Assembly (NCBI GenBank): GCA_002269645.1 | Contig: NIVC01002492.1 | Span: forward strand, 104,819-168,818 | DNA length: 64,000 nt | Source: Macrostomum lignano | Lineage: Eukaryota | Direction of reading: 5' to 3' | In this document: piece by piece, positions 12,926-56,781 of the stretch | Layout of the letters: every line of letters begins with the position of its first letter | How positions within the stretch are numbered: position 1 is the stretch's first letter | Notes under the pieces: generated by a model | Database searches by the model: none | Told to the model about the DNA's origin: nothing | The model's input: the letters and a program-made list of their open reading frames with translations, nothing else | Program-made: the position numbers and the translations under genes

Positions 12926-12992
12926 GTTTGTGTGGCTGGAACCGCGCTGGGTTAGAGAGTGATGATCAGTCAATAGTTTGCTTGCGACGCCA

Positions 12993-23681: not shown

Positions 23682-24425
23682 TATGCTTTGCTGGCCCCGA
23701 CCGACGAGACGAGTTGACTGCGATGTCATGCAACTGTAAAGCACAGCTTCGGGTTCCGTTTTATTAACCGTCCTTATGTTACACTATGTTACATTCTTAT
23801 GGATTTTTGGCCTGTTTCAGATCTTTATCCTTCTATTTGACAAACAGCAGACAAGCACAATACTGCATGGCGTATGTTTACTCAAATTCCTACTACTACT
23901 GTACAGCAGTGATAAAAAAGCGATTCATAAGAGAAGTTATTCACATATTTCTTCACGTGAGCCGAAACAGTTTAAATTTATTAGAAATAGAGAAAGACGA
24001 AAAGTTTAATTTTTTCATATAATAACTGAAAACGCGCAGCGCATGATAATCTCCGTTTTTTAAGATAAAAAACAAACAGCTCTTGCTGTGTGTTGGATTT
24101 GGAGTGCCTTTGTACCGACCCTCTGTTATGTGTAGCGTCGCCAGTGTACACTTGGCGGTCCCCGTCTCAGTGTGTTGGGATGGGGTTGATGTGCGTGAGG
24201 CGTTGATGAGTCAGAGAGTTGGAGAGAGAAGGATCGATTTAATTTAATATATAAGCAATAATTTAGCCAAAGGGCTCATTTACCTGTTTTTTGTTAAAGT
24301 CTAACCCTCCGATTTATTAGACTTGATTATTTCTTTAACATATGGCGCCCGAACCAAAATCACAGTAAAATCAAGCCGTGAGCGCAAGAGTGCTACAGTG
24401 ACTCAGCGATTTATCAACAACAGCA

Positions 24426-27400
24426 TGAACTCCAGGAAGAGAGGCGTGTTACGAGCGACGGTCACCAGACTGGCACAGAAAGCCGAAGACCTGCTCAAAA
24501 CAGATGCTGCTGAAGATGAAATCGACAGCGTTCTAGAGGCTCTACGGTTCAAGAAGCAGCAGCTCCAAGCAGCAGATGAAGAGCTCGCCGCGGAGGTTGA
24601 CGAGAAGGACGTGCAGGCTGAAGCAGAGACGACAATGGAGTACGACCTGCTGGCTGGCAAATTGATCTCAAACCTCACCAGACGGCTCCAGGAGCTTCAG
24701 ACCGCGCGGACTGGCACGCCGCAGGCATTAAACCTGCTGCAGAATACAGCCATACAGACGACGACTTCGTCCAAGTCAACGACAAGGACTCAGACTGCCA
24801 TCAGGTTGCTAAAACTGCCGCCACCGTCATTCAGTGGCGATCGGACCCAGTGGACGGAATTCTGGGACCGCTTCAACTCCAGTATCCATGACAACCCGAG
24901 CCTGAGTGTCGTCGACAAATTCAGCTACCTGCAGTCGTGTCTGTCTGGGGAAGCCCGAAACTCGATCGCTGGTCTCAACATCACGAAGGACAACTACCAT
25001 ATCGCCATCGACAACCTGCAACGACGATTTGGATCCCGCAACGGAGCCGTGCGCGAGCACCTGGCAAAGTTCTCGGCGCTGACCTGCTTCAGTTCGTCGG
25101 CACAGCACCTGAGGAATTTCTACGACCAAGTCAATGGAAATGTCCGCAGTCTGACGAATCTCGGGGTGAGTGTCGAATCTTACGAGTCCATGTTGCTGCC
25201 CAACTTGCTGGCGAAGCTGCCGGAAGTCGTTCGTCTCGGGATGCTGAGAACTGCTCGGATTGCTTTCGTCGGTTATTCCTTTGGTAGCAGCTTGTCGCAG
25301 ATGAGGGATGGCAATGGCTTAGATTCTGTGACGGAGTTTCTGCAGGTCTTGGAAATGGAGATTTTAGTCCGGGAGGAGGCGGCCGTTGGAGCTGGAGGGC
25401 AGACGTCCGGTTCCAATGGAGCGTCCAAGACTGCTGGTGAGAAACAGACAAGGGATGGCGGCACAGTGGCTACGCTTCACACGAAGGTCAAAAAGGTCAG
25501 CACGGCTTGTCCCTTCTGCGAAACTGAACATGCTCCAGAGAAGTGCACTCGCCTGGTAGACGTTGCGGCACGACTCCAGTTTTTGAAGGAGCAGAGGCGT
25601 TGCTTAAGCTTTCTCTGCAAGGGACACAGCGTCAAGACCTGCTACCACAAGAAGCAATGTGAATTCTGCCAGATGAAGCATCACCCAAGTCTCTGTAGCG
25701 CACGCATGGAGAAGCTGCAGGGTAAGGATGGACCGAAAGCACCCGGCTCCACACTTGGAAAGGTGGGAGAAGACCGGAAGAAGTCCGAGCAGGCTGCTGC
25801 ACAGAATGTGAAGAGTCAAGAAGTGAAGACCATGGCTATGGTGACAAAATCTCAAACAGTGATCCTTCCAACAGCGGGAGCTGTACTGATTTTGACTGTT
25901 AACAATCGGGAGACTCCGGTGCGAATTCTCTTTGACTCTGCAAGCAACCGTTCGTTCATCTTGACCAGCTTGGCTGAGAAGATGGGGCTCCAGGTCATGG
26001 GCAGAGAGACGATGGAGGTGACAACATTCGGTGGCACAGAGGCCAAGGTGCTGCAGACTGCGATGGTCGAGTTCAAGCTTCGGAAATCTGACAGCACCGC
26101 CCAGTTCACAGTGCGCGCCAACACAGTGCCTTACATCTGCTCTCATCAGCCAGTTGTCAGCAGCTTGTGCATGAAGCACTTTCAACACCTCGACATGGCA
26201 GACTGGGACATCGGTGGTGAACAGAATCCCGAGATCAGTATCCTCATCGGAGCCGAACAATTCTACGACCTCGTCACAGGTCAAGTGATTCGCTCAGAGG
26301 TTGGCTCCGGTCCAGTTGCCGTAGCCAGTCAGCTCGGTTGGTTGCTGTGCGGGTCACTGTCAGATGGGATCGCCGCAAGTGAGCTAGAGACCAGGTCAGA
26401 GCAGGTTCTTCTCTGCTGTGCTCAAGGAGCGGAGAAAGGTCTGGACAGCAGCACCATCGAGGCGTTCTGGACTTTAGAAGGTCTCGGCATCAGAAGTGCA
26501 GCCGAGCCTGATCAGCGTCCACTGACTCTGAATGCCCAGTTCCAAGAGGGTCGCTACTCAGTTCAGCTGCCGTGGAAGATTCCCAAAAAGGAATTAAGAT
26601 TGCCCGACAATTTTGAGGTAGCGTTCAAGAGACTAAAGACCAATCTGACGAGGCTGCGTCGTGAGCCTGCGCTACTTCAGGAGTACCACCGCATTCTGAC
26701 CAGTCAGAAGGAAGCTGGCGTAGTCGAAGAAGCTCCAAATGGGACCAGCGATCTCATCCACTACCTACCCCACCGAGCCGTAATCCGTCCTGAAGCTGAA
26801 TCGACCAAAGTTCGAGTGGTTTTCGACGCGAGTGCCAAGCGAGATCAGTGCAGTCCATCGCTGAATGACTGTCTGGAAACAGGAACCTGTTCGTTGGCCG
26901 AGATTCCGCGACTGCTTCTGGCATTTCGACTTCATCCGATCGCCTTGACTGCCGATATTGAGAAGGCTTTTTTGCAGATCCGAATTGCAGAAGACGATCG
27001 CGATGCTCTACGATTCCTCTGGCCACGGGATCCCAGTCAAGCTGATTCACCTCTTGTTGTTCTGCGCTACGCTGCTCTGGTGTTCGGACTCACCTGCTCA
27101 CCTGCCGTCCTGGAGACTGTCATTCAACACCATTTGGCATCTCACCGAGGCCAGAATGCAGAGTTCGTGGATAAGGTGTCCAAAGAAATCTATGTGGACA
27201 ACCTGATCTCTGGGTGCGTGGATGAACAGCAGGCCCTGGATCTCATCCAAAAATCCCGGCACATATTCCAACAGGCTGGAATGAATCTGCGACACTGGCA
27301 GTCCAACAGCAAGAATGTATTGAAAGCGGTTCGCGCCAGCACACTTGACAGTGATGTTCTTGCTCCGGCGTTGTCGGCGGTGACAAAGGACATCACGGAG

Positions 27401-29776
27401 GACCCCTCCAGCTATTCAGCCGCCTCATTGGGCGAAGATGGCGTATCGTCAAAAGCCCTCGGACTGCGATGGGAGACAGGATCGGACGTGTTCGTGCTGC
27501 AGTTTTCTCCGCCAGAAGATTTGCTCAAGGCGTCGCCATCCAAGCGTGTCGTGCTACAGCTGCTGGCCCGTGTCTACGATCCTCTGGGTTTCCTGGTTCC
27601 GCTGCTTACGTTGCCGAAATCGATGTTCCAAAAGCTGTGCGTTGAAAAGATCGCTTGGGACTGCCCGCTAAAGGAGCCGATTAAGCAGCAGTGGCTGAAG
27701 TGTTTGCAGGAGATGCTGGCAGGTCGATTTCAAGTTCCAAGGTTGGTGCTTTCGGCGACGAAGGAGGTCGAGGAGCTGCATGGGTTCTGTGATGCGTCAG
27801 TCAAATGCTATGCGGCGTGTCTTTACCTGCGAGTGCAGTACACCGATGGTTTCGTCAGCTGCAACCTGGTGGCCGCCAAGGCGAGAGTGGCTCCACTGTC
27901 GGTTCTTTCAATTCCTCGGCTCGAACTCCTGGGTGCCTTGATACTCGCCAGACTGTTGACATCATCCATGAGTCAGTATCCTCAGGTTCGCCAGGTGTTT
28001 TGCTGGACAGACAGTGCCGACACGCTCTACTGGATCCGGCAGCACAGACCCTGGAAGCTCTTTGTTCATAATCGGGTGACGGAGATCCGCCGCCTGGTGC
28101 CAGGGGATGCCTGGAGACATGTCCCAGGCGAGGAGAATCCGGCGGACGTTGCATCTCGAGGAACATCAGCGAGCAAGTTGCAGGCGGACAACAGCTGGTG
28201 GCACGGTCCAGGCTGGCTGGCACGACCTCCTGACGATTGGCCCGACCAATCCTTTCTCAGCTTACCGACAGCGGCAGTTGCCGACGAGTAGAAGACACAG
28301 GCGAACCGTCCCGTTGTTCTGCTAACTGAAGCTGGTCCTGACATCAGTCTACAAGAAGTTCTCAATGACACGAACTTCTCATCCTGGACCAATCTGATTC
28401 GAGTGACAGCCTATGTCCTACGCTTCGTCAGAAACCTGCAAGCTATAACTTCTGCAGCGGGGGAGGAGCGAGTGGGACTACTGGCTGCAGCAGAAGTCCT
28501 TGAAGCTGAAGAGCGCTGGCTGCTAGAAGTGCAGAGACAGAGTTTTCAAGCCGAAATTGCTCACCTTCAGGAGTCAGCGGCCAGTACAGATCTCAGCAGG
28601 CAGTTGAATCTTTTTCTAGACAACAAGAGTATTCTCCGAAGCCAAGGTCGATTGAAGGAGTCCAACGCCTCTGCCGAGGTTGACTGTCCGATTCTGATCC
28701 CGAACAAGTCACACCTGGAGCTTCTTCTCATCTGGGACGCTCACGCCAAGGTTCTGCACGGGGGAGTGCCCAGCACTCTTTGTAAGCTGCGAGAGAGATT
28801 CTGGCTAATCAGAGGAAGACAGCGAGTCAAGTCGATCCTGAGAAGGTGCTTTGTCTGCAGACGTCTTCAAGGACTACCATATGCAGTGAAGCAAATTCCA
28901 GCCTTACCTGAAGCACGCGTGAAGTCTGGGAGAGCCTTTGAGTGGTGCGGACTCGACTACTGCGGACCTGTCAAACTGATGGAGGACACAGAAATCGAGA
29001 AAGGCTATATCCTGGTTTTCACCTGTGCGGCCACGCGAGCCCTTCACCTGGAACTGGTGAGCGACTTGACGACCGAGACCTTCCTGCGAGCCCTCCGAAG
29101 GTTCTGTGCTCGGAGAGGAATTCCCAATCTCATCAGTGACAACGCCAAGACATTCACCAAGGCTGCCAAAATACTTCAGGCGTCGGAGAGTCGACAAGTT
29201 CAAGACTTCTGCGCCACCAGGAAAATCACCTGGCAATTCATCGTCGAACGCGCACCGTGGCAAGGAGGCTTCTGGGAGCGACTGATGAGGGACATCAAGC
29301 TGGCTTTGCGCAAGACCATCCTCAACGCAACCCTGACGCTGGACGAACTGCGGACAGTGCTAATGGAGGTGGAAGCGGTGCTCAACAGTGGGCCTCTACT
29401 CTACGTGGATGCCGAAACCAACGGAGAAGTCCTGACGCAGGCGCACTTTCTGGTCCTGCAACGGCTGACGGCGGAGCCAACTTCCAGCGGTACGCCCGAG
29501 CTCCTGCTGCCGTTGCCAACACTGCTGAGGCGAATGCGCGCCAGACTGCAAGCCTTCTGGGACTGCTGGGAGCGACAGTATCTGACCAGCCTGCGAGAAC
29601 ATAATCTAAGTCCCAAGCATGGCGTAACTCGAGAAGCGACGGCACATCCTGGCCGAGACGGGGCGGTGAGATCTGTAACGGTTCGAGTCGCGCCCAGACC
29701 TGGCCGCGGTCCCAGGAGATGCTTGATTCACCGACCGGTGGAGAACCTGATTTGGCTGGAAGCTGTGACCGAATGA
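24426..29776 (+). CDS. BEL/Pao gag-pol polyprotein with one in-frame TAG at 28289-28291
   Basis: DUF1759-like FSGDRTQWTEFWDRF, Cys/His knuckles, protease LFDSAS, RT ADIEKAFLQI/YVDN, RNase H DAS..YAA, integrase GLDYCGP/SDNAKTF; ORF 28403-29776 is in the same frame. Confidence 0.92.
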
Positions 29777-30595
29777 ACTTAAGTAACTGACTTTCAATGA
29801 CTGTTCTAATCGTTGTTTCGAGTTCCTGTTTAGTTTTAGTTCGCAGTAATTTTCACTCACTTTCAATCTTACCTTTTGAGCTCCTTGGCGCTGATTGGAT
29901 TTTTTTTAGTTTCGTTTTCCCTTTGTTCCTCACTTACGTGCTTCTTCGTTGCTGAATTCGCATTCAAACTGTTGACGATTTGCTGCCGTTCGTTTGCGTA
30001 ATATTTTCGCTCTTCGAATACTCGTATCAACCTTTAAGTAATGATGAAGCATCATTAGGGGGAGTGTGTTGGATTTGGAGTGCCTTCGTACCGACCCTCT
30101 GTTATGTGTAGCGTCGCCAGTGTACACTTGGCGGTCCCCGTCTCAGAGTGTGTTGGGGTGGGGTTGATGTGCGTGAGGCGTTGATGAGTCAGAGAGTTGG
30201 AGAGAGAAGGATCGATTTAATTTAACAGTAAAACTACCAAGAGGGGGGGGAAAATTTCCCCCCCCCCCCTGACAATTTTTTTTGCTGCGCCGGAACGGAG
30301 CAACGCAGACACACAAAATTCAAGAACACGGGCTAACTTTTTGTTGCGCACCTTCTCAAACAAGAATCAAGTCGCCAGCCCTCCGGACCGTCGAGATATT
30401 CGACGATTCTTCCAGAAGGTCGGATTTTTCCCATAAGCGCTAGTGTATTCAGTACACCCCTGTGCGCCAAATAGCACTGCGACTCAGTGCGGCCTTGCCA
30501 AGTCTCCAAATTTCATCAGCACGTCGACCACATGTGTCTGCATCAGCTCTGACTTCGTTGGTCACTAGCCTTCACCCAGGCGGAGCTTCTAGACC

Positions 30596-30900
30596 TTCAA
30601 CAGATGACACCAGGCGACTATGAACACCCTGATGCAAATTTCTCTAGTTTCGCTGATCAAGCCTCGACAGTGAGCAAGCCTCAACTTCTGGACACCCTCA
30701 GCTAATCTCTCAAGCATTCAGTCATCACTCGGACGCCGTCGGCACCTTCAACAGATGACACCAGGCGACTATGAACACCCTGATGCAAATTTCTCTAGTT
30801 TCGCCGATCAAGCCTCGACAGTGAGCAAGCCTCAACTTCTGGACACCCCAGCTAATCTCTCAAGCATTCAGTCATCACCCCGACGCCGTCGGCACCTTCA
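30596..30900. repeat. About 151-bp tandem repeat in the left arm (2 units)
   Basis: TTCAACAG recurs at 30596, 30747 and 30897. Confidence 0.85.
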
Positions 30901-31407
30901 ACAGGTGGCACTAGGTGAGTAAGGACATCGAAGCGTGGTTTTTCATCATGCTCTTAACATTTATGAAGCTAATACATTTTTTAAGCACGGACATTGCTAT
31001 AGATAAGCTTGAACTCATGTTGCTGTATATTTATATTATTATTACACATACTTTTATACATACGAGCTACATACATATTTTATTTGACAAGCTGTTTAGT
31101 TATTCAACTATAATATTGAACCCAATATTTATGCAGAAAGGGTTATGCTTTTAAAAAATGAAAAAAACTATTCAATTTACCTGCACGCAAATGAAATTTA
31201 GGATCAAGTAATTAAAGATAACTACTAGTATTATATAAAAAAGAAACGAAAATTAGCGCAAAAGCATGATAGCTACTACTGTACATTCGCAAGAAATCCT
31301 AGAACAATGACAAGTTTTTCATTATCCTCAAATGTCCTTCAATTTTCTGATTACATGCACAACAAATTCGAGGCCGGAAATCTTTCGTGCTCCTTCTGGC
31401 TGGATTT

Positions 31408-33173
31408 TTACTGTTGGTTGTAGCAGGTGTCGCACAATGAGACATCGTTTCGATGTCTCTTGCACACGAAACTAGCGCAGTTCGCACACTTTTTGTTTCG
31501 CGTGTTCAGCGAGTACTTCTCCGCACTTGTGCTCCTTTCTGCCATGCACAGTCGGCATCGCCCTCGCTCTCCTGCTGGCCGATCGGCGGTAGCGCATTCA
31601 GGGAACTGATAATTTGGTTGGATTTTCAGCACCGTGTTGAAAAGACTACGAAGATGACTTGACATGCCGGTTAGGTCATTCGCACGGCGTTCAATCTGCG
31701 GTTGAAGCAACCCGGAAGCAGCTTGAAGGAGAAATTCTTTGCGAGCCAGGCCCGTGTGACCTGATAGACGGTAAACCGTGTCGCCGTTGATCCACGCCAC
31801 ATTGAGCATGTGTCCAGTGAAAATTGTCTTTTCAAGACAGCGCGATATGCGATGGCAGTTCATAGTGGTAACCATTCTGTTGATCGTGTCGGTGCCAGCC
31901 TTCGTTGTGTTGTAGTGCTGGATCAGCTCTGGTTTGTTTTTTGGAGGCACACGTCGGCTGTCATGATGATTAGTGGATAACAGAATTACAGTCCTCCGCT
32001 TGCTTGAAGCACGCACGACTGTAAGAGGCCCGTCATACAGGAACTCCGGCTGACTTGGTCTCTTGTTGTCCTTGAACTGAGGTGGCAGGCCCTTGCGATC
32101 GCGCTTTACGGTTCCCAGAAGTGTTATTTTCTCATCGTAGAGCGCTGCTGCCACCCTTGGGCTAGTAAAAAAACGATCAGCGGTAATGTTTATCCAAAAT
32201 CCTTTAAAGTTGTCGGATAGACGAAGAAGCACTTGCTCGCCACTCCAGTATTTGCTGACGCCACCGCTCTCCGCTTTCATCAGCAGGTTGTTTTCTGCGG
32301 TGTACAATTCTGACTTGTACACATAATGTAATGTTTCACTGCTTTCTTCGATCGGACTTCGAGCAGTGGTTGCCGTGAAAAACTTCAGGCCGTTTCTTGC
32401 TGGCTTGTCCTTCATGAAGACAGTAAAGCTACAGTCATTGCCATAGTATCGAATGAGCTGTTCATCGATACAGATGTAGGCTCCAGGCAGGACGGGCATT
32501 GCGAGGCGATCTTGAAAGTTGCTATACAGAGCTCGAATGCCGTAGATAGGATCTCTGGCAGTCCTTGCAATCCGGCTCGCGCGACATTCAAACGAGAGAC
32601 AACTCCATAATTGCGAAAATCTGTTTCTCGAGAAGCCTGTCACCAAAAAAGCGTGAATCGGATGACAAGGGTCGACAGACCAAATTTGCTGTACACTTGC
32701 GTTACGCATGTTGTGGGCTCCTAAATAAAGTAGTGCTCCAATGAAGCCTTCCATTTCAACAACATCACAGTCTTCGAAGTCACTGCCAAGTCTGCGATGG
32801 CCAGTCTCATTTGTCGATCTGACAATTTCTTCAACAGCATCTCTGGGCAAAAAAATAGGACGCATTCCGTTGGCGAGTCAAAGGAAAAGTTTGGATTGAT
32901 CTGCGGTTCCAAACGCAGCACAGAGTCGCTTGGCCATCGCCTTGGGTGCGGATGTTGAGTGCTATAGCTAAATTCATGATTTGGTAGGGGCTTGATCTCA
33001 TGAATTACTTGTAGTTTTGACGGCGCTAAAGATACTTCGGGCGACTCCTCATCTGACAGGAACTCGTCAGCGTCAGCTTCACTTACTTCCGAATCACTTG
33101 AATCGGTACTGGTCGATCTTGATTCGTCGGTTGGGTCAGAACCTTTGGGGCATCTGCCGCTATAGCTCGCCAT
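31408..33173 (-). CDS. piggyBac (DDE_Tnp_1_7/PGBD4-like) transposase; single 1-bp frameshift in an A7 run at about 32850
   Basis: Acidic N-terminus, then CIDEQL, TADRFFTS, AGTDTIN (catalytic D triad) and C-terminal Cys-rich RCRLC...CANCASFVCKRH..CDTC. Confidence 0.9.
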
Positions 33174-33545
33174 TGCATTTGACACAAAACTGCTTGTCTG
33201 ATATCTGAAGCTTTGAAAATTGCACTCTTGTCTGTTTTGGGCCAGTAAGTTTTGGGGTTTAGAGTCTTTATAGACCCACCCTTGCGTGGCTGGCGCTCTG
33301 GTTTCCCCTTGTGCCCCTAGAGACCCTCCCCTCGCTGGCGGCAGACCGTGATTGGCTGCTGCCCAACAGACAGACAGCCTTTACCTACCCTGCATTCTGC
33401 CCGCTGTCTAGCCCTGCAGTTCCTACGGGTATATATGTGAAAAGGTTGTTTACACACCACTTGCCATCCAACACTCATGCATTTATATCACAAACGAGGT
33501 TCCGCAAATTAGGTTTCTTAAGTCAACAGCTTCAGCGCTGCAAAG

Positions 33546-33950
33546 GTGCGTGACATGTCTTCCGACATTGAGAACGTTAAGGATTTTCTGCGGCGGAATG
33601 GCGCAACAACGAATGACATAAAAAAGTTTGTTGCATTTTGTTCCATCTACAAGGACACCAGAAGAAAAGAAGCTCGCTATGAGGCCTACCGAATTTGGGC
33701 TAGATACTTGCGCCGATCACCAATAGGACCTGGAAAGTACACATGGCCAGCTGAAATTACCACCTATCTTCGAAAAGTCACTGGTGGCAGGGCTGTTGAT
33801 GCACCGCCTGTAAGTATCGATGTACTGTACACGAAGTGGTTACGAAAAAATATTGTCTTATTTTCATTTCTATTCCAGCCAGAAGGAGCACGAAAGATTT
33901 CCGGCCACGAATTTGTTGTGCATGTAATCAGAAAATTGAAGGACATTTGA
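33546..33950 (+). CDS. Accessory ORF of the piggyBac element, function unknown; probable intron at about 33810-33878
   Basis: 134-aa ORF divergent from the transposase; CCT|GTAAGT donor and TTCCAG acceptor; RYEAYR.W...IGPG...P..I..YLR motif. Confidence 0.55.
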   Translation: MRDMSSDIENVKDFLRRNGATTNDIKKFVAFCSIYKDTRRKEARYEAYRIWARYLRRSPIGPGKYTWPAEITTYLRKVTGGRAVDAPPVSIDVLYTKWLRKNIVLFSFLFQPEGARKISGHEFVVHVIRKLKDI

Positions 33951-34375
33951 GGATAATGAAAAACTTGTCATTGTTCTAGGATTTCTTGCGAATGTACAGT
34001 AGTAGCTATCATGCTTTTGCGCTAATTTTCGTTTCTTTTTTATATAATACTAGTAGTTATCTTTAATTACTTGATCCTAAATTTCATTTGCGTGCAGGTA
34101 AATTGAATAGTTTTTTTCATTTTTTAAAAGCATAACCCTTTCTGCATAAATATTGGGTTCAATATTATAGTTGAATAACTAAACAGCTTGTCAAATAAAA
34201 TATGTATGTAGCTCGTATGTATAAAAGTATGTGTAATAATAATATAAATATACAGCAACATGAGTTCAAGCTTATCTATAGCAATGTCCGTGCTTAAAAA
34301 ATGTATTAGCTTCATAAATGTTAAGAGCATGATGAAAAACCACGCTTCGATGTCCTTACTCACCTAGTGCCACCT

Positions 34376-34983
34376 GTTGAAGGTGCCGACGGCGTCGGGG
34401 TGATGACTGAATGCTTGAGAGATTAGCTGGGGTGTCCAGAAGTTGAGGCTTGCTCACTGTCGAGGCTTGATCGGCGAAACTAGAGAAATTTGCATCAGGG
34501 TGTTCATAGTCGCCTGGTGTCATCTGTTGAAGGTGCCGACGGCGTCCGAGTGATGACTGAATGCTTGAGAGATTAGCTGAGGGTGTCCAGAAGTTGAGGC
34601 TTGCTCACTGTCGAGGCTTGATCAGCGAAACTAGAGAAATTTGCATCAGGGTGTTCATAGTCGCCTGGTGTCATCTGTTGAAGGTGCCGACGGCGTCGGG
34701 GTGATGACTGAATGCTTGAGAGACTAGCTGAAGATGTTCCGCGGTTGAGGCTTGCCCATTGGCAAGGCTTGATCAGCGAAACTAGAGAAATTTGCATCAG
34801 GGTGTTCATAGTCACCTGGTGTAATCCGTTGAAGGTGCCGACGGCGTCAAGGTGATGATGGAAGGCTCGAGAGACTAGCTGAGGATACCTAGCAGTTGAG
34901 GTATGCCCACTGTCGAGGCTTGATCAGCGAAACTCGAGAAATTCGTATCAGAGTGTCCATAGTCACTTGGTGCCACCTGTTGA
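34376..34983. repeat. About 151-bp tandem repeat in the right arm (4 units)
   Basis: GTTGAAGGTGCC period of about 151 bp; reverse complement of the left-arm unit. Confidence 0.85.
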
Positions 34984-35896
34984 AAGTCCAGAAGCTCCGC
35001 CTGGGTGAAGGCTAGTGACCAACGAAGTCAGAGCTGATGCAGACACATGTGGTCGACGTGCTGATGAAATTTGGAGACTTGGCAAGGCTGCACTGAGGCG
35101 CAGTGCTGATTGGCGCACAGGGGTGTACTGAATACACTAGCGCTTATGGGAAAAATCCGACATTCTGGCAGAATCGTCGAATATCTCGACGGTCCGGAGG
35201 GCTGGCGACTTGATTCTTGTTTGAGAAGGTGCGCAACAAAAAGTTAGCCCGTGTTCTTGAATTTTGTGTGTCTGCGTTGCTCCGTTCCGGCGCAGAAAAA
35301 AAATTTGTCAGGGGGGGGGGAAATTTCCCCCCCCCCTTTGTAGTTCGACGGGCGGAAAAATGGCTTGGTATTCCTACTGTTAATATATAAGCAATAATTT
35401 AGCCACAGGGCTCATTTACCTGTTTTTTGTTAAAGTCTAACCCTCCGATTTATTAGACTTGATTATTTCTTTAACATGCTGCTTATGAGACAAGTGAAAA
35501 GAGCAAAAATATTTCATAAAAACTCAGATTACAAATGCACTTTTGTCTGAGCTAAAATTGCTCATTTAGGTGCTTGTAAAACGCAGCTAGGTCAGGATAC
35601 TGGGTGAGGATCTCAGCCAACTAAAAGCGACTGCTTTGAGCATTAACTTAACTGATTTTAACTACGAGTAATAGACAAAAATTCTGACGCTCCGTAAAAC
35701 AAACTTGGCCTAGCGAATTTATGAATACATGTATAAATACAGTAGTAGTGGGCCTACTGTACGGCAAATGGTGGATACATCACATATTGGGCCATAGATA
35801 CTAAATACCCTATAGATGGATGGTTCACTCGTAGCAAAACTCTGTGTTCGGTAGTACGAGTATGAGCATAAAAAGCAACATGTATCCCCCACTTGC

Positions 35897-37293: not shown

Positions 37294-39015
37294 CTAATGA
37301 CAGGCGGCACAGAGCGGACACAGACACGGTGGAGCGGAGCGGAGCGCGGCTGCGACCTGTGAATGAAGAGCGGTGCGAGACACGGCAGAAATGGTGTGGG
37401 AAGCAAATTCGAAAGGGCAAATGCATAAAGAGCCGTAAAGACGGCAGCAAAAATTAATGAGCTCTCTGCTCGAGCCCCCCATTCTAGAAGCGGAGTCGCT
37501 CAGCAGCTGCATCTGGCCAGAAAGGTGGAACGCCTGGAGCTGAATTCCCGACGTGAGGCACACGAGAGCAACGGTCTGATAGATGCGAATGAGCAGAGGA
37601 TGCCGACAGGACAGCTTATTGACCATGCCGACGGCAGCAGTGCTATCCGGGTAAATCACAACGCGGCTGTTCCTAAGCTGCTCGCGGAAGCGCAGGATGG
37701 TAAGCAGCGGAGCCAGCGCCTCTTTGTGGTTGATGTGAAGGTCGCGGAACTTGCTCTCGAAGTCCTTCTCCCAGCTGAAGTACGCCCAGTCATTGAATTC
37801 GCTGCCAAAGACGATGCCAGCAGCACCCTCGCAACTGCTGTCAGATTCGATGGCCACAAGTTGACGAAAACGGGGGCGAATGACCGTCGGCGGCAGAGAA
37901 CTCACGACGCGCAGCCACCAGAGGAAGAGGTTGCGAAGCTCAGATGGCAGCCGGGTGTCCATTCTGCAGCTGAGGATGTCGAAGAGCGGGCGCAGGAAAG
38001 GACGAAAAATCCTGTTGATCTGGCTGAGCCAGCACAACTTGCCGGCCAGTTTTTCGAGCTGCTTCAGCTTAACAACGTCACGTGACAGGCAATCGTTCAG
38101 CAGTTTCCGAATGTCGTCTTTCTTGTTGCTTGGAAGTGACAGGGTGCCGTTCACAGTGTCAACCAGCACGCCGAGAAACACAACGTGTTGAGCTGGGGCC
38201 ACGGTCTTCTGCCAGTTGATGTCGAAGCCTAAGTTCTGCAGTAGATCAACCAGATAATTAAAGGCCTCCTGAGCCGCTTCTTTAGTATCAGCGGCTACTG
38301 CCCAGTCGTCCAAGTAGTTGACGGTAGCTGTGAAGCCAATGCTGAGCATGTGGCGCTTGATGCAGGCCGATAAGCGATGGAAAATTTCACATGACGCTCG
38401 AGCACCAAAGGTCAACCGGGTGTCAACGAGCACCGAGTCATCGCTGTCGGCAGCAAACCGCCAGCTGAGGCCCGTGAGCACCTGGTCGTCTGGGTGAATA
38501 CCGACGGAACGATAGGCCTGCTTGAGGTCGATTTTGCCGATAAACGAGCTTAGGCGAAGATAGCGGGTCAGGTCTTGGACAGAGGCGAAGCGCAGCCCCT
38601 TTTCCTGCTCATAGCTGTCGTTGACGGAGGACCCCGGAGGTCTAGAAAGGTCATGAATGACCCGGACACTGCCGTCAGATTTTGGAATCGCCCCGATGGC
38701 GTTCACCATGACAGGGCCATTGGCGAGCTGCAAGCGGCCGAGACGGAGCTCCTCGGCGAGCTGTTCATCAACCTGCTTGGCTTGGTTTAAGGCTGAGCGG
38801 TAGTTGGCGGAGCAGGAAAGAGAAGGCGGCGACCTATTGACGAGCCGAAAGCCGTAACTAAGGCCGCTGCGAAGAAAATTTTCGTCTTGGTCACCCAGAA
38901 GCAGCGGCTCCCAGGTGGCAAGGTTCATGTCGGACGACAGAGCGCGGCGCGGTGGAGAGAGCAGGGTGGGAGCTGGGCAATGAGCAGAGGGAGGCAAGAT
39001 AAAAGGCGACGGCAA
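37294..39015 (-). CDS. RT-RNase H of the YR retroelement
   Basis: RVIHDLS, KIDLKQAYR, LTFGARAS, NYLDDW, FLGV, ESDSS, HINHKE, DSTAAV. Confidence 0.92.
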   Translation of the reverse strand: MPSPFILPPSAHCPAPTLLSPPRRALSSDMNLATWEPLLLGDQDENFLRSGLSYGFRLVNRSPPSLSCSANYRSALNQAKQVDEQLAEELRLGRLQLANGPVMVNAIGAIPKSDGSVRVIHDLSRPPGSSVNDSYEQEKGLRFASVQDLTRYLRLSSFIGKIDLKQAYRSVGIHPDDQVLTGLSWRFAADSDDSVLVDTRLTFGARASCEIFHRLSACIKRHMLSIGFTATVNYLDDWAVAADTKEAAQEAFNYLVDLLQNLGFDINWQKTVAPAQHVVFLGVLVDTVNGTLSLPSNKKDDIRKLLNDCLSRDVVKLKQLEKLAGKLCWLSQINRIFRPFLRPLFDILSCRMDTRLPSELRNLFLWWLRVVSSLPPTVIRPRFRQLVAIESDSSCEGAAGIVFGSEFNDWAYFSWEKDFESKFRDLHINHKEALAPLLTILRFREQLRNSRVVIYPDSTAAVGMVNKLSCRHPLLIRIYQTVALVCLTSGIQLQAFHLSGQMQLLSDSASRMGGSSRELINFCCRLYGSLCICPFEFASHTISAVSRTALHSQVAAALRSAPPCLCPLCAACH

Positions 39016-39049
39016 ACGGGGTTAAAAGCAGGGCGGCTATAAAAAAGAT

Positions 39050-40140: not shown

Positions 40141-40247
40141 ATCTCTGCTCTCTACAAGTAACAAAAAGATAACCAAATAAAGCATTCACAAAGAAAACAG
40201 ACAAAATGCTTAAATGAAGTGCAATGCAAAAAGAAATCATCCCAAGA

Positions 40248-40492: not shown

Positions 40493-40580
40493 ACCAGACA
40501 ATAATAGCTAGTGCGACAATTTCCTTAGCATTATAGTGGCTCCTTTAAAATTCGCTTACTTTCACTTTTGAAATTGTATC

Positions 40581-40867: not shown

Positions 40868-43221
40868 CAGTAGAACTACCAAGGGGGGGGGGGGAAATTT
40901 CCCCCCCCCTGACAAATTTTTTTGCTGCGCCGGAACGGAGCAACGCAGACACACAAAATTCAAGAACACGGGCTAACTTTTTGTTGCGCACCTTCTCAAA
41001 CAAGAATCAAGTCGCCAACCCTCTGGACCGTCGAGATATTCGACGATTCTGCCAGAAGGTCGGATTTTTCCCATAAGCGCTAGTGTATTCAGTACACCCC
41101 TGTGCGCCAATCAGCACTGCGCCTCAGTGCAGCCTTGCCAAGTCTCCAAATTTCATCAGCACGTCGACCACATGTGTCTGCATCAGCTCTGACTTCGTTG
41201 GTCACTAGCCTTCACCCAGGCGGAGCTTCTGGACCTTCAACAGGTGGCACCAAGTGACTATGGACACTCTGATACGAATTTCTCGAGTTTCGCTGATCAA
41301 GCCTCGACAGTGGGCATACCTCAACTGCTAGGTATCCTCAGCTAGTCTCTCGAGCCTTCCATCATCACCTTGACGCCGTCGGCACCTTCAACGGATTACA
41401 CCAGCTGACTATGGACAGCCTGATAATAATTTCTCTAATTTCGCTGATCAAGCCTCGATAGTGGGCAAAAATCAACTGCTGGACATCCTCAGCTAGTCAG
41501 TCAAGCATTCCGTCATCACCCCGACGCCGTCGGCACGTTCAACAGGTGGCACCAGGGGAGTAATGACACGTGAGCGTGATTTTTCATCATGCTCTTAACA
41601 TTTCTGAATCATTAAAAAATGAAAAAACCGACTGAATTTACTGGCTTTTTAAAAGCATAACCCTTTCTGCATTGGGTTCAATATTATAGCTGAATAAACT
41701 AAACAGCTTTTCGAATAAAATATGTATGTAGCTCGTATGCATAAAAGTATGTGTAATAATAATATAAATATACAGCAACATAAGTTCAAGCATAACTATA
41801 GCAATTTCCGTGCTTGAAAAATTTTGAGAGCTTCAGAAATGTTAAGAGCATGATGAAAAATCACGCTCAGGTGTCCTTACTCCCCTGGTGTCATCTGTTG
41901 AAAGAGCCGACGGCGTCCGGATGATGACGGAATGCTTGAGAGACTAGCTGAGGATGTCCAGCAGTTGAGGCTTGCCCACTGTCGAGGCTTGATCGGTGAA
42001 ACTCGATGACGTGACGCGAAAGTCAGGAATCGAATGTTGTTTGAACGAGTATAAATTCTTGCGATATATTTGCAGTAGTAGAATAGTCTAAGTTGCTTGA
42101 CGAGACACAGATCGAGAGCAATGGTTTAAATATTGCGACTATTGAAAATATTGAAGTGGAGTATTGAACTATATTGATGCACTGCATGATTGAGCAAGTG
42201 GAGGGACTTAAGGGGCGAGGCAAGGCTAGAGCAACGATGTACACTGAATTGCACTGAATTGCAAAGTGACTGAGTTAGCAGAATAAAGTTAAGCAAAAAA
42301 CCGCACACAGTTACCCATGCTAGCAAACCAACGAACCGTCACTTCACTCGAGAAGTTCGCATCAAGGTGTTCATAGTCACCTGGTGCCACCTGTTGAAGG
42401 TGCCGACGGCGTCGGGATGATGACGGAATGCTTGAGAGACTAGCTGAGGGTGTCCGGCAGTTGAGGCTTGCCTACTGTCGAGGCTTGATCGGTGAAACTC
42501 GAGAAAATCTTATCAAGGTGTCCATAGTAACTTGGTGTCATCTGTTGAAGGAGCCGACGGCGTCGGGATGATGACGGAATGCTTAGGAGACTAGCTGAAG
42601 GTGTCCAGCAGTTGAGGCTTGCCTACTGTCGAGGCTTGATCGGTGAAACTCGAGAAAATCTTATCAAGGTGTCCATAGTAACTTGTTGTCATCTGTTGAA
42701 GGAGCCGACGGTGTCGGGATGATGACGGAATGCTCAGGAGACTAGCTGAGGGTGTCTGGCAGTTGAGGCTTGCCTACTGTCGAGGCTTGATCGGCGAAAC
42801 TAGAGAAATTCGCATCAAGGTGTTCATAGCCACCTGGTGCCACCTGTTGAAGGTCTAGAAGCTCCGTCTCGGTGAAGGCCAGTAACCAACGAAGTTAGAG
42901 CTGATGCAGACACATTTGGTCGACGTGCTGATGAAATTTGGAGACTTGGCAAGGCTGCACTGAGGCGCAGTGCTGATTGGGGCACAGGGGTGTACTGAAT
43001 ACACTAGCGCTTATGGGAAAAATCCGACATTCTGGCAGAATCGTCGAATATCTCGACGGTCCGGAGGGTTGGCGACTTGATTCTTGTTTGAGAAGGTGCG
43101 CAACAAAAAGTTAGCCCGTGTTCTTGAATTTTGTGTGTCTGCGTTGCTCCGTTCCGGCGCAGCAAAAAAATTTGCCCCTTGGTAGTTCGACGGGCGGAAA
43201 AATGGCTTGGTATTCCTACTG
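40868..43221. mobile_element. Non-autonomous derivative of the CAGTA piggyBac
   Basis: TTAA TSD at 40864-67 and 43222-25; same ends and 151-bp repeats as 30226-35379; no ORFs. Confidence 0.92.
42007..42346. mobile_element. Solo LTR (340 bp) inserted in the piggyBac derivative
   Basis: TGACGTGACG...CGTCACTTCA ends, 5-bp TSD CTCGA (42002-06, 42347-51), TATAAA and AATAAA inside. Confidence 0.75.
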
Positions 43222-55437: not shown

Positions 55438-55539
55438 AGTCCCTGATGTAAGTCTATAGTTAAGTTACATATGTTGGTTTACTTGTCACTCGCCTTGACA
55501 GTGAGAAACCTTAGCTGCTGAGCATCTTCAGTTAGTCTC

Positions 55540-56143
55540 CTAAGCATCCGGTCGTCACCTAGGCGCCGCGAGTCTTTCAATGGGCGACATCAGATGATCA
55601 TGCATGGACACACTATGTCAGCTTTTTTTGTTAAGCTCCAGTAAAGGGCGACAGCTGCCGTCTGGACATCCTCAGCTAGACTCTCAAACGTTCCTTCATC
55701 ACCCCTACGCCGTCGGCTCCTTCAACAAGATGGAGCTTCATCATCCTTTACATTTTAAAGCTCCTAAAATTATTTTGCACATTATTTTACTGTATTTTTA
55801 CATGCTTTTAAGGTATTTCTACTCACTGGCTATTACTTGTACTTGTTTTATTGGCAAGTTGTTTATTTTACTTGCCTGTTGAAACTCGAGAAACTCCGCT
55901 TGGGTGAAAGCCAGTAAGTAACCAACGAAGTCAGCGCTGATGCAAACACATGTGGATGACATCCTGATGAAATATGGTGGCTTGGAAAGGCCGCACTGCT
56001 GATTGACTGGTGACTTAGTTCTTGTTTGAGAAGGTGCGCAACAAAAAGTTGTAGCCCGGCGCAACAAAAATTTTCTGGGGAATCCCCCCCCGGTAGTTCC
56101 ACTATGGTATTCGACTAAAATGGCTTCATTCGTATTCCTACTG
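55540..56143. mobile_element. Old relic of the CAGTA piggyBac family
   Basis: Diverged 151-bp unit, TTCTTGTTTGAGAAGGTGCGCAACAAAAAGTT, end GTATTCCTACTG|TTAA; left boundary approximate. Confidence 0.75.
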
Positions 56144-56781
56144 TTAATTCCTTATTTTTAACAGTAATCACAATTAACTACGTACTTTGCATGTATTTTA
56201 ATGCATACATACATGTACATGTAGCTATACAGTTTTGATCAAATTTCAGGTAATGGGGCCGGGTATCGCACCATTCGCTCTTTTAGAGGACATTTCGAGC
56301 ATGCACTCGCTACGTCGCTTAAATAGTGATGAAAATGCGAGACAAATTTTCCGCGTGTTGCATAGCTAGCAAGCCAGTGCGCAGCTATAAATAAACTTGT
56401 GCGAGTACTTTTGTTTATTTTGATTATTCAAGTTGCCGGAGAGTATACTGTTGAGACTTTTAGATTCTAAATGAACGAAAAAATCGCTGTATAAAAGTTT
56501 ATTAAGCGATTTTTTTTATATGGACGCGAATTTTCGGAACTTAAAAATGGAAGCGAATAAGCAAACAGTGCTACTTTTTCTGGATTTAGCTAGAAAATTT
56601 AAGGAAGTGCGAAATAAAAGAATTACTTGTAGGTGCCTTGATGACTTGCTACAGAATATAGTACTACAACTATATATCTTAGAGTAAGCGCGAATATACT
56701 TCGGACTGTCAGGATTACATGAATTAAGTCAGACTCCACTCATAAAAATGAAGTGCAGGTCATTATCGAAATAGCCGACAC

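What the first reader, a model, noticed from the sequence alone, without database searches (positions are those of the whole stretch)
30226..35379. Atypical piggyBac: CAGTA ends, kb-long inverted arms that supply both genes' 3' regions, two divergent ORFs
Seen: TTAA TSD and a DDD transposase, but the termini are CAGTA(G/A)...CTACTG rather than the usual CCC/GGG. The arms (about 1.2 and 1.5 kb) reach to within 4 bp of the transposase stop and include the last exon of ORF2, so both divergent transcripts end in the same sequence. There is a terminal G7-AAAATTT-C11 hairpin and an asymmetric spacer of about 30 bp at one end only, recalling the T. ni piggyBac asymmetry. Inference: an undescribed foldback-type piggyBac lineage; arm transcripts could form dsRNA and self-silence.
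Basis: partly seen in the sequence, partly recalled or inferred. Interest (0 to 1): 0.75.

Follow-up and report, generated by a model that had tools for sequence, protein, structure and literature searches.

The report
Two-gene piggyBac transposon with kilobase arms
This is a real, recently mobile piggyBac-type jumping gene from a Macrostomum flatworm; it is unusual because its inverted ends are over a kilobase long and it carries a conserved second gene, but it is a variant of a known kind of element, not a new kind.

Summary
Window 30226-35379 is a 5,154-bp piggyBac-superfamily transposon flanked by a duplicated TTAA. The uninterrupted target site is still present in the sister LTR of the BEL/Pao retroelement it landed in. 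Its tips are CAGTA(A/G)...CTACTG.

The arms are 1,179 and 1,506 bp and 98.8% identical. They contain 151-bp tandem repeats, 2 copies on the left and 4 on the right. They reach to 3 nt past the transposase stop and to 5 nt before ORF2 exon 2.

The outer about 45 bp (left) and 73 bp (right) repeat the geometry of T. ni piggyBac. That geometry is a tip, a 10-bp box (one left, two right), 28 extra bp on the right, then a palindrome with a 6-7-bp A/T spacer.

A second, internally deleted copy (40868-43221) and a right-end fragment (to 56144) share these ends. The only close relative is 73% identical in the transposase (Logan contigs). It keeps the divergent ORF2 with the same intron position (dN 0.21, dS saturated), and an inverted repeat begins about 300 bp after both genes.

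The dsRNA idea fails as stated, because the two mRNAs would end in the same-sense sequence, not complementary ones.

Verdict: a new variant of a known kind. Interest is moderate.

The parts
30222..30225 (.). Left copy of the TTAA target-site duplication
   Evidence: The empty site in the sister LTR has a single TTAA at 24244-24247.
30226..30241 (+). Left-end tip CAGTAA plus the 10-bp box AACTACCAAG
   Evidence: Copy 2 has the same tip and box (CAGTAG+AACTACCAAG). The box occurs in the window only at element ends.
30243..30269 (.). Left-end palindrome G8-AAAATTT-C12. It is the proposed binding site for the transposase Cys-rich domain (inference).
   Evidence: The position and the 7-bp A/T spacer parallel the TGCGT-7 bp-ACGCA site at LE17-33 of T. 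ni piggyBac (PMC5861402).
30226..31404 (.). Left arm (1,179 bp). From the outside inward it holds the end sequences, a 300-bp subterminal unique part, about 2 copies of the 151-bp repeat (30593-30927), and an AT-rich inner part.
31328..31399 (-). Mirror copy of ORF2 exon 2, lying just downstream of the transposase stop. It differs from the true exon by one base (31371).
31079..31084 (-). First AATAAA downstream of the transposase stop. It lies inside the arm.
31408..33173 (-). piggyBac transposase gene. The ATG is at 33173 and the TAA stop at 31410-31408. One frameshift lies at the T7 run (+ strand A7, 32849-32855). Otherwise the gene is open, at about 587 codons.
   Evidence: The intact relative P0001 reads ECVLFFIPREIVEE across the break.
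33174..33554 (.). 381-bp divergent promoter region. TATAAA lies on the minus strand at 33267-33272, and TATATA at 33430-33435.
   Evidence: These are motif matches only; promoter function is inferred.
33555..33809 (+). ORF2 exon 1 (85 codons)
   Evidence: It is 71% identical to P0151, and the similarity ends exactly at VDAPP, followed by GT.
33810..33878 (+). ORF2 intron (69 nt, GTAAGT...CCAG, phase 0)
   Evidence: The relative has a 90-nt GT..AG intron at the same codon, and that intron contains stop codons.
33879..33950 (+). ORF2 exon 2 (23 codons plus the stop)
   Evidence: The relative encodes PDGARNVSGEEFVNYVIKRMKDI*, which is 61% identical and the same length.
33874..35379 (.). Right arm (1,506 bp). 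From the inside outward it holds the AT-rich inner part with AATAAA at 34194-34199, 4.1 copies of the 151-bp repeat (34360-34984), the subterminal unique part, and the end sequences.
35311..35336 (.). Right-end palindrome G10-AAATTT-C10
35336..35379 (-). Outermost part of the right end. Read from the tip on the minus strand it runs CAGTAG, box GAATACCAAG, an 18-bp spacer, then box AACTACAAAG. That is 28 bp more than the left end.
   Evidence: Copy 2 has the same layout, and the fragment ending at 56144 has a diverged form of it.
35380..35383 (.). Right copy of the TTAA target-site duplication
24088..24341 (+). Paralogous empty site. This is the 5' LTR of the BEL/Pao element, 98% identical to the joined flanks, with one TTAA at 24244-24247.
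40868..43221 (+). Copy 2, an internally deleted non-autonomous relative. It has both arms, both kinds of end and a TTAA duplication, and it sits inside a 23-bp satellite array.
55492..56144 (+). Diverged right-arm fragment (82-86% identical in the BLAST matches, about 89% in the 166 bp of subterminal sequence that align). It ends in ...TATTCCTACTG followed by TTAA.

Best explanation
Window 30226-35379 is a young, near-autonomous cut-and-paste DNA transposon of the piggyBac superfamily in a Macrostomum flatworm genome. It inserted at a TTAA in the 3' LTR of a BEL/Pao retroelement, about 24 kb from a telomere.

**Shown**
- The exact boundaries and the duplicated TTAA are established.
- The transposase has the DDD residues and the Cys-rich domain. 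Its only defect is a 1-nt deficit in a T7 run, which could be a real mutation or a homopolymer error in the assembly.
- The end architecture is conserved across copies.
- A second gene, ORF2, is transcribed divergently from a 381-bp central region. It is conserved under purifying selection, with a conserved intron, in the only close relative.
- The 1.2 and 1.5-kb inverted arms contain 151-bp tandem repeats.

**Inferred**
- The working ends are only the outer about 45 bp (left) and 73 bp (right). They have the same geometry as T. ni piggyBac: a tip, a 10-bp box present once on the left and twice on the right, 28 extra bp on the right, and then a palindrome with a 6-7-bp A/T spacer. In T. ni the Cys-rich domain of the transposase binds a palindrome at the equivalent position.
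- The rest of each arm is a long, internally repetitive subterminal inverted repeat of the Foldback/Galileo style. It supplies the first AATAAA polyadenylation signal to both outward-reading genes, so the two mRNAs share a same-sense 3' end.
- The arms are kept alike and reshuffled by recombination or gene conversion within and between copies. A recent conversion tract of 812 nt extended the repeat up to the transposase stop and over ORF2 exon 2 in this copy.
- ORF2 encodes a 12.5-kDa, helical protein with pI about 10. It has no detectable homologue outside this lineage. It is most likely an element-encoded accessory or regulatory factor, possibly DNA-binding. Its role is unknown.
For: **Boundaries and mobility**
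- The empty site is present in the sister LTR.
- Copy 2 has a TTAA duplication and interrupts a 23-bp satellite array.
- The subterminal 300 bp are 95-99% identical among the four arms of copies 1 and 2.
- The host LTRs are 98% alike, so the insertion is younger than the retroelement's own insertion.

**Transposase**
- It matches PF13843 with E = 1.3e-48.
- It aligns to T. ni piggyBac (6x67) with E = 4e-36, with IDEQL, ADRFF and GTDT at the D268, D346 and D447 positions. The C-terminus follows the pattern C-x2-C-x19-C-x2-C-x4-C-x2-H-x6-C-x2-C.
- The intact relative P0001 (580 aa) is 73% identical.

**Ends**
- Five ends were compared.
- The G/C-run palindrome occurs at three of the window's element ends (both ends of copy 1 and the left end of copy 2) and nowhere else, against 0.01 expected by chance.
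- Published T. ni data give the matching layout. The Cys-rich domain binds TGCGT-7 bp-ACGCA at LE17-33 and RE45-61, and a 10-bp box occurs once in the left end and twice in the right (PMC5861402). The published spacers are 3 and 31 bp (PMC5381638).

**ORF2**
- P0151 is 71% identical.
- Contig L002 overlaps L001 by 1,049 bp at 100% identity. This places ORF2 divergently, 1,159 bp upstream of the relative's transposase.
- Exon 2 and the intron phase are conserved. All 108 codons align without gaps, with dN = 0.21 and dS saturated. The transposase has dN = 0.18 and dS above 4.

**Arms in the relative**
- The last 30 nt of L002 equal L001 2692-2721 in inverted orientation. This is a sharp repeat boundary 317 bp after the transposase stop and about 300 bp after the ORF2 stop.
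- In both elements the first AATAAA after either stop lies inside the arm.

**Conversion**
- The inner 812 nt have 1 mismatch, while the outer 364 nt have 13.
- The arms cluster neither by side nor by copy.

**Host**
- The neighbouring gypsy pol is 92% identical to a Macrostomum lignano protein.
Against: - No transcript, small-RNA or transposition data exist here. The promoters, splice sites, polyadenylation sites and binding sites are all inferred from sequence.
- The transposase frame is broken once in this copy.
- The equivalent of T. ni D450 is N in this element and in its relative. D450N lowered excision in T. ni in one assay.
- The palindrome is missing from the right end of copy 2.
- The 151-bp repeats show no similarity to the terminal motifs, so there is no sequence evidence that they carry extra transposase sites.
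- The relative's arm is known only from a 30-nt contig overlap plus 933 bp on one side. Its tips were not recovered.
- In the relative, exon 2 is outside the arm, so the shared last exon is not a lineage feature.
- ORF2 has no Pfam, PDB or fold match, and its model is weak at pLDDT 58.8.
Confidence: 0.8

Rival explanations
1. The long arms exist to make double-stranded RNA, so the element silences itself.
For: An 812-nt inverted repeat with one mismatch would form a long hairpin in any transcript that crosses the whole element. The same holds for arms-only copies such as 40868-43221. Hairpin-derived silencing of transposons from inverted duplications is established in other systems, for example Mu killer in maize (from my own knowledge, not checked here).
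Against: The geometry argues against it for the element's own mRNAs. Both genes read outward from the centre into inverted arms, so both transcripts carry the same-sense arm sequence and are not complementary (coordinates). A hairpin needs read-through from outside, or failure to terminate at the AATAAA sites inside the arms. No small-RNA data are available.
Confidence: 0.12
2. The kilobase arms, or at least their inner part, are a one-off rearrangement of this copy or an assembly artefact, not a property of the family.
For: The inner 812 nt are almost perfect while the outer part is about 96-98% identical. In the relative the repeat starts about 300 bp further out and exon 2 is not part of it. 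Homopolymer lengths vary between ends, which fits a long-read assembly.
Against: Copy 2 retains both arms, with 151-bp repeats and pieces of the AT-rich inner part on both sides. Its parent therefore already had arms of at least 0.74 and 1.26 kb. The relative has a sharp inverted-repeat boundary after both genes. A fold-back assembly artefact would give a palindrome with little or no spacer, not two arms around 2.5 kb of intact, oppositely oriented genes.
Confidence: 0.1
3. ORF2 is a passenger (a captured host fragment or a chance ORF) with no role in the element's life cycle.
For: No domain, fold or homologue was found outside the lineage. More distant piggyBac contigs lack it. Apart from this element, the piggyBac elements described in the papers I read have a single ORF.
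Against: ORF2 is retained next to the transposase, in the same divergent orientation, in two elements whose synonymous sites are saturated. All 108 codons align without a gap, dN is 0.21 (similar to the transposase at 0.18), and the intron position and exon 2 length are conserved. No paralogue turned up in the Macrostomum lignano proteins held in the searched collection.
Confidence: 0.1

Closest known systems
T. ni piggyBac (IFP2), the founding member of the superfamily
   Same: - Both use a TTAA target and duplicate it.
- Both have a DDD transposase with a C-terminal cross-brace Cys-rich domain (28% identical in the HMMER alignment).
- The ends are asymmetric in the same way. A short tip is followed by a 10-bp box, present once on the left and twice on the right. 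The right end carries 28 extra bp: 3 versus 31 bp in T. ni, 0 versus 28 bp here.
- A palindrome with a roughly 7-bp A/T spacer starts about 17-21 bp from the left tip and about 45-50 bp from the right tip.
   Different: - The tips are CAGTA rather than CCCTA.
- The palindrome arms are G and C runs rather than TGCGT/ACGCA.
- The loop of the Cys-rich domain that reads the DNA is 19 residues here and 11 in T. ni.
- The D450 equivalent is N.
- This element is 5.15 kb against 2.47 kb.
- This element has 1.2 and 1.5-kb inverted arms with tandem repeats.
- This element carries a second gene.
piggyBac-like elements with long inverted repeats: bee elements with 200-493-bp TIRs and CACTA tips (PMC10140906), and 'SG2' elements with subterminal inverted repeats up to 400 bp (PMC5381638)
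   Same: They belong to the same superfamily and use TTAA. Their tips are also not CCC, and CACTA differs from CAGTA by one base. Their inverted repeats are far longer than the usual 12-19 bp.
   Different: - The arms here are 2.4 to 3 times longer than the longest reported in those surveys.
- The arms here are internally repetitive, with 151-bp units.
- The arms here carry the 3' ends of the genes.
- Those elements are described with one ORF.
- The G at tip position 3 lies outside the published motif C[C/A/T][C/A/T].
[quoted passage not shown]
   Same: [quoted passage not shown] They give rise to arms-only ('2-TIR') derivatives. Sequence exchange between arms and between copies produces mosaics (PMC3573991 and PMC3688188; compare).
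   Different: - The transposase superfamily is unrelated (THAP/P-element versus piggyBac DDD) and the target duplication differs.
- In Galileo the tandem repeats contain extra transposase-binding sites. No similarity between the 151-bp repeats and the ends was found here.
- The resemblance is in architecture only, not in membership.
Two-gene DNA transposons: PIF/Harbinger (Myb-like ORF1), En/Spm-CACTA (TnpA), MuDR (mudrB)
   Same: Each combines a transposase with a second, element-encoded protein. In En/Spm that protein binds repeated subterminal motifs (from my own knowledge, not checked here).
   Different: ORF2 has no Myb/SANT domain or any other recognisable domain. No binding data exist. 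The superfamilies differ.

Membership tests
piggyBac superfamily (autonomous piggyBac-like element) | Insertion at TTAA with a 4-bp TTAA duplication | tested here: met
   TTAA lies on both sides of copy 1 and copy 2. The paralogous empty site has a single TTAA.
piggyBac superfamily (autonomous piggyBac-like element) | Transposase of the DDE_Tnp_1_7 (PF13843) family | tested here: met
   E = 1.3e-48 at 166.5 bits against a cut-off of 22.4, covering profile positions 9-347 of 349.
piggyBac superfamily (autonomous piggyBac-like element) | Catalytic triad equivalent to D268, D346 and D447 | tested here: met
   All three aspartates align with the T. ni residues in the alignment to 6x67. The nearby D450 equivalent is N, also in P0001. 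D450 is not part of the triad.
piggyBac superfamily (autonomous piggyBac-like element) | C-terminal Cys-rich (cross-brace zinc finger) domain | tested here: met
   The pattern C-x2-C-x19-C-x2-C-x4-C-x2-H-x6-C-x2-C at the C-terminus aligns to T. ni residues 559-592.
piggyBac superfamily (autonomous piggyBac-like element) | Short terminal inverted repeat starting with C and ending with G, with subterminal repeats at unequal distances from the two ends | tested here: met
   The tips are CAGTAG...CTACTG. The box and palindrome are 28 bp further in at the right end, in three right ends compared with two left ends.
piggyBac superfamily (autonomous piggyBac-like element) | Tip motif CCC/GGG, or the published C[C/A/T][C/A/T] (typical, not defining) | tested here: not met
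   The tip is CAG, and G at position 3 is outside the motif given in PMC5381638.
piggyBac superfamily (autonomous piggyBac-like element) | Single ORF (typical, not defining) | tested here: not met
   A conserved second gene, ORF2, is present.
piggyBac superfamily (autonomous piggyBac-like element) | Precise (seamless) excision that restores a single TTAA | not testable with these tools
   The empty site shows the state before insertion, not an excision event.
Foldback-like / Galileo-type architecture (a structural class, not a phylogenetic family) | Terminal inverted repeats of several hundred bp or more containing tandem repeats | tested here: met
   The arms are 1,179 and 1,506 bp, with 2 and 4.1 copies of a 151-bp unit.
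Foldback-like / Galileo-type architecture (a structural class, not a phylogenetic family) | Arms-only derivatives and exchange of arm segments between copies | tested here: met
   Copy 2 is such a derivative. Arm similarity follows neither side nor copy, and different segments have different divergence.
Foldback-like / Galileo-type architecture (a structural class, not a phylogenetic family) | Additional transposase-binding sites inside the tandem repeats (shown for Galileo) | tested here: inconclusive
   There is no similarity between the 151-bp units and the terminal 55-80 bp beyond what shuffled sequence gives. Binding itself cannot be tested here.
Galileo / P-element superfamily | THAP-domain P-type transposase | tested here: not met
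   The transposase is PF13843 piggyBac-type and has no other Pfam hit.
PIF/Harbinger-type two-gene transposons | Second ORF with a Myb/SANT-like DNA-binding domain | tested here: not met
   ORF2 and its relative have no Pfam match even at E <= 10.

The most novel reading that the evidence does not exclude
This lineage may be a two-component piggyBac. In that reading, the small basic ORF2 protein is a required cofactor or dedicated regulator of transposition, for example by binding the repeated arms or by controlling the transposase. The long arms would then be a functional module that gives both genes a common 3' end and so common post-transcriptional control. The searched literature describes no such arrangement for the piggyBac superfamily.
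Probability: 0.3. Interest if true: 0.65.

Novelty: new variant of a known kind. Interest (0 to 1): 0.52.

Why it matters
piggyBac is one of the main tools for genome engineering. In the surveys I could read, its relatives are treated as single-gene elements with short ends.

This lineage shows three things:
- The Foldback/Galileo-style architecture has arisen independently in the piggyBac superfamily.
- The T. ni end geometry, with its 28-bp left/right difference and a palindrome at a fixed distance, is retained although the end sequence is entirely different and the transposase is only about 28% identical. That argues the geometry is a structural requirement of the transpososome.
- A piggyBac can carry a second gene under purifying selection.

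The element is also native to Macrostomum, the one flatworm genus in which transgenesis with T. ni piggyBac has been shown to work in principle. An endogenous, apparently recently active relative matters both as a possible tool and as a possible source of cross-mobilisation.

None of this changes how piggyBac transposition is understood. The value is comparative.

Tried and rejected
1. **Exact look-up of the window's 485-aa ORF** in public assemblies. It is not on record, so no further copies from the host species could be collected.
2. **Function of ORF2.**
   - Pfam at E <= 10 found nothing.
   - PDB sequence profile found nothing.
   - AlphaFold2 on a two-sequence alignment gave five helices at pLDDT 58.8.
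   - Foldseek against PDB gave no hit below E = 2.8.
   - I draw no functional conclusion from these.
3. **JGI metagenome contigs scanned for ORF2 relatives.** 600 pattern matches were found and none was confirmed.
4. **Context of more distant transposases.** Acanthaster (L005), a pseudoscorpion (L006) and metagenome contigs (L007-L009) have no ORF2 homologue and no kilobase arms. L007 has a 127-bp inverted repeat.
5. **A false lead in L005.** A CAGTA...TACTG pair in L005 turned out to have no TTAA beside it and was dropped as chance.
6. **Extra terminal motifs in the 151-bp repeats.** They do not contain any; similarity is no better than with shuffled sequence.
7. **An older, diverged arm in the relative.** The roughly 300 nt between each stop codon and the repeat in the relative show no similarity to each other.
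8. **An early overestimate of divergence.** My first figures of about 10% divergence between copies, and 91% identity for the outer arm, were artefacts of ungapped extension across homopolymers and repeat units. Gapped alignments give 95-99% between the arms of the two copies and 98.8% between this copy's own arms.
9. **Other TTAACAGTA / TACTGTTAA matches** at 56158 and 51638. They have no partner end and no further similarity, and about 0.5 matches are expected by chance.
10. **Literature.** I found no report of an endogenous piggyBac in Macrostomum, and none of a two-ORF piggyBac.

Full report

Yes. The sequence reads ...GATTTAATTTAA|CAGTAAAACTACCAAG... at 30222-30241 and ...GGTATTCCTACTG|TTAATATATAAG... 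at 35367-35391.

The boundaries do not rest on the inverted repeat alone. The 162 bp to the left and the 98 bp to the right of the element, joined across one TTAA, match 24088-24341 at 98%. The three-way alignment shows the uninterrupted site GATCGATTTAATTTAATATATAAGC there. Pfam hits on the ORFs between these stretches (24323-28291 and 28403-29776) identify a BEL/Pao retroelement. The two matching stretches are therefore its LTRs. The element inserted into the 3' LTR and duplicated TTAA.

**2. Anatomy**

The arms:
- They span 30226-31404 (1,179 bp) and 33874-35379 (1,506 bp).
- A gapped alignment gives 1,162 of 1,176 positions identical.
- Three indels account for the length difference: 28 bp at the right tip, 3 nt in a homopolymer, and 302 bp that equal two extra 151-bp repeat units.
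- The inner 812 nt differ at one position (31371/33907), while the outer 364 aligned nt differ at 13.

The genes between the arms:
- The transposase is on the minus strand, with ATG at 33173 and TAA at 31410-31408.
- ORF2 is on the plus strand, starting at ATG 33555.
- A 381-bp region separates them. It has TATA-like motifs facing both ways.

The transposase:
- It matches PF13843 (E = 1.3e-48).
- It aligns to T. ni piggyBac residues 137-594 (E = 4e-36), with aspartates at the D268, D346 and D447 positions and a complete Cys-rich C-terminus.
- The frame is broken once. The relative P0001 reads ECVLFFIPREIVEE, whereas the window has ECVLFF followed by a shift to PRDAVEE at a T7 run (+ strand A7, 32849-32855). 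One more T would restore the frame.
- Homopolymer lengths also differ among the ends. I cannot tell a mutation from an assembly error.

Inner edges of the arms:
- The inner edge of the left arm lies 3 nt beyond the transposase stop.
- The inner edge of the right arm lies 5 nt before ORF2 exon 2.
- The sequence after the transposase stop is therefore a mirror copy of ORF2 exon 2 plus its 3' region.
- The only AATAAA within reach of either stop lies inside the arms, at 34194 and at its mirror 31084.

**3. The ends**

Five ends can be compared.
- Left ends of copies 1 and 2: TTAA-CAGTA(A/G)-AACTACCAAG-G(8-12)A(3-4)T3C(9-12).
- Right ends of copies 1 and 2: TTAA-CAGTAG-GAATACCAAG-CCATTTTTCCGCCCGTCG-AACTAC(A/C)AAG, followed in copy 1 by G10-AAATTT-C10.
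- The right end thus carries a second copy of the 10-bp box and is exactly 28 bp longer before the palindrome.
- The diverged fragment ending at 56144 has the same plan with a longer spacer.
- The right end of copy 2 has lost the palindrome.
- The palindrome occurs at three of the window's element ends and nowhere else, against 0.01 expected by chance.

Published work on T. ni piggyBac describes the same plan:
- 13-bp terminal repeats and 19-bp internal repeats lie 3 bp apart on the left and 31 bp apart on the right, also a 28-bp difference (PMC5381638).
- The 19-bp repeat contains TGCGT and ACGCA separated by 7 bp, at LE17-33 and RE45-61. The Cys-rich domain binds it.
- A 10-bp box is present once on the left and twice on the right (PMC5861402).

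It can fold as single-stranded DNA, but that is not needed for the interpretation. This is an inference from position and form. The sequences differ entirely. The protein loop that reads the DNA in T. ni is 11 residues long, and here it is 19.

**4. Is it a family?**

Copy 2 in the window:
- It spans 40868-43221, has TTAA on both sides, and interrupts a 23-bp satellite array.
- It keeps element positions 1-742 and 3896-5154. It has lost both genes and carries a 339-bp unrelated insert. This is the usual form of an internally deleted non-autonomous derivative.
- Its parent already had long arms on both sides.
- The 300-bp subterminal segment is 95-99% identical among the four arms of copies 1 and 2. 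The closest pair is the right arm of copy 1 and the left arm of copy 2, at 99.0%.
- The AT-rich inner part of copy 2 is only 88.6% identical to that of copy 1.
- Together with the near-perfect inner 812 nt of copy 1, this points to repeated exchange or conversion between arms, as described for Galileo (PMC3573991).

Relatives outside the window:
- The word-indexed search of 5.8 billion proteins returned one hit, P0001, which is 73% identical.
- An exhaustive HMMER scan of 1.84 billion representatives found 4,806 piggyBac-type hits. Only P0001 exceeded 50% identity, and the next best were 29-33% identical. Those that carry names come from a pseudoscorpion, a mayfly and a starfish.
- ORF2 had one hit, P0151, at 71% identity.
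- The contigs carrying them, L001 and L002, come from Logan runs SRR31628394 and SRR31628392. They overlap by 1,049 bp at 100% identity, so they represent one element.
- In that element ORF2 again lies upstream of the transposase in divergent orientation, 1,159 bp away.
- Similarity between P0151 and ORF2 stops at VDAPP followed by GT. A 90-nt GT..AG intron containing stop codons follows, and then a 23-codon exon ending KDI*, the same length as in the window.
- All 108 codons align without gaps. dN is 0.21 with synonymous sites saturated. For the transposase dN is 0.18 and dS is above 4.
- ORF2 is therefore a real spliced gene that has stayed with this transposase under purifying selection.

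Arms in the relative:
- The last 30 nt of L002 equal L001 2692-2721 in inverted orientation. Identity begins abruptly there, and the preceding roughly 300 nt on each side are unrelated.
- A 30-nt overlap is what a k = 31 assembly graph leaves at a repeat boundary.
- The relative thus has an inverted repeat that begins 317 bp after the transposase stop and about 300 bp after the ORF2 stop. L001 follows it for 933 bp without reaching a tip.
- In the relative too, no AATAAA or ATTAAA precedes the repeat on either side. The first one is 185 nt inside it.
- Exon 2 is outside the repeat there. The 'shared last exon' of the window copy is best explained as a recent inward extension of the arm.

**5. 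Host and setting**

- The gypsy-type ORF at 8909-13033 is 92% identical to a Macrostomum lignano protein, and the next hits are also from M. lignano.
- The window ends in at least 4.2 kb of TTAGGG repeats, from 59788 onward.
- The element therefore sits in a transposon-rich subtelomere of a Macrostomum flatworm.

**6. How it most likely works**

Shown:
- The element has the target, the ends and the enzyme of a cut-and-paste piggyBac.
- It moved recently.
- It encodes a second conserved protein.

Inferred:
- The transposase recognises the outer 45 bp on the left and 73 bp on the right, as in T. ni.
- The arms supply termination and polyadenylation signals for both outward-reading genes.
- Conversion between the arms keeps them alike.
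- ORF2 (12.5 kDa, pI 10.1, predicted helical) acts as an accessory or regulatory factor.

The plus-strand transcript of the right arm and the minus-strand transcript of the left arm have the same sequence, not complementary ones. Only a transcript crossing both arms would fold back.

**7. Comparison and novelty**

It passes every defining test for the piggyBac superfamily that can be run on sequence. It departs in typical but non-defining features:
- The tips are CAG. This lies outside the published C[C/A/T][C/A/T] motif and is one base away from the CACTA tips of bees.
- The arms are 2.4 to 3 times longer than the longest piggyBac inverted repeats in the surveys I could read, which report 400-493 bp.
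- It has a second gene.

In architecture it parallels Galileo and Foldback elements, whose transposase is unrelated. I could not consult Repbase or Dfam, so 'undescribed' remains unverified. I rate it a new variant of a known kind, of moderate interest.

**8. Limits**

- There is one full-length copy, one deleted copy and one fragment in 64 kb, plus one relative assembled from short contigs.
- No expression, small-RNA or activity data are available.
- The neighbouring retroelements were only scanned ORF by ORF and were not extracted or assembled.

Noticed in passing
window 59788-64000 (also 58512-58541): The window ends in a telomere. (TTAGGG)n runs from 59788 to the last base with occasional imperfect units, and an interstitial (TTAGGG)5 lies at 58512-58541. 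A C-poor, G-rich stretch precedes the array (58.7-59.8 kb).
   Followed up: partly
window 24088-35477: A BEL/Pao LTR retrotransposon carries the piggyBac in its 3' LTR. Its pol-type ORFs lie at 24323-28291 and 28403-29776. Its LTRs are 98% identical, so it is itself young.
   Followed up: partly
window 8909-13033 (-): A Ty3/gypsy element has an uninterrupted 1,374-aa gag-pol ORF that is 92% identical to Macrostomum lignano BOX15_Mlig014458g9. This is what identifies the host genus.
   Followed up: partly
window 40579-40869 and 43228-44099: A 23-bp satellite (TGGTGGCTCTTTAATGTTTGACA, about 50 units) is interrupted by copy 2 of the piggyBac. An 18-bp repeat lies just upstream at 40300-40498.
   Followed up: no
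window 31405-31413 (-): The last codon and stop of the transposase plus AAA read CAGTAAAAA. This is nearly the left tip sequence (CAGTAAAAC), and it abuts the inner edge of the left arm. It was noticed after the fact. Chance is about 0.15 for one such 8-mer anywhere in the element and far less at this particular spot. The motif is not present in the relative.
   Followed up: partly
window 33584-33607 versus 35276-35299 and 30278-30301: The 5' coding part of ORF2 matches the subterminal arm at 21 of 24 nt, and the peptide LRRNGAT can be read in both. Significance is borderline (tblastn E about 0.04-0.08; by my own estimate about 0.01 for the nucleotide match). It could be chance or an old duplication between an arm and ORF2.
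   Followed up: partly
window transposase, motif GTDTINRM (residues 324-331 of the 485-aa ORF): The fourth conserved aspartate of piggyBac transposases (T. ni D450) is asparagine in both the window transposase and its relative P0001. D450N reduced excision by T. ni piggyBac in one published assay.
   Followed up: partly
window 34386-34398 and equivalent positions in each 151-bp unit: Most 151-bp arm repeat units contain the 13-bp palindrome CCGACGGCGTCGG. It is a candidate protein-binding site and was not tested.
   Followed up: no
window 37294-40501 (-): Between the two piggyBac copies lie further retroelement ORFs. One (37294-39015) has reverse-transcriptase domains, and another (39758-40501) has a SAP domain and hexapeptide-like repeats. 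They were not analysed.
   Followed up: no
L007 360-485 and 3275-3401: A distant piggyBac on an ENA metagenome contig (about 32% identical transposase) has a 127-bp inverted repeat (87% identical) flanking its gene. This is another case of longer-than-usual piggyBac inverted repeats.
   Followed up: no
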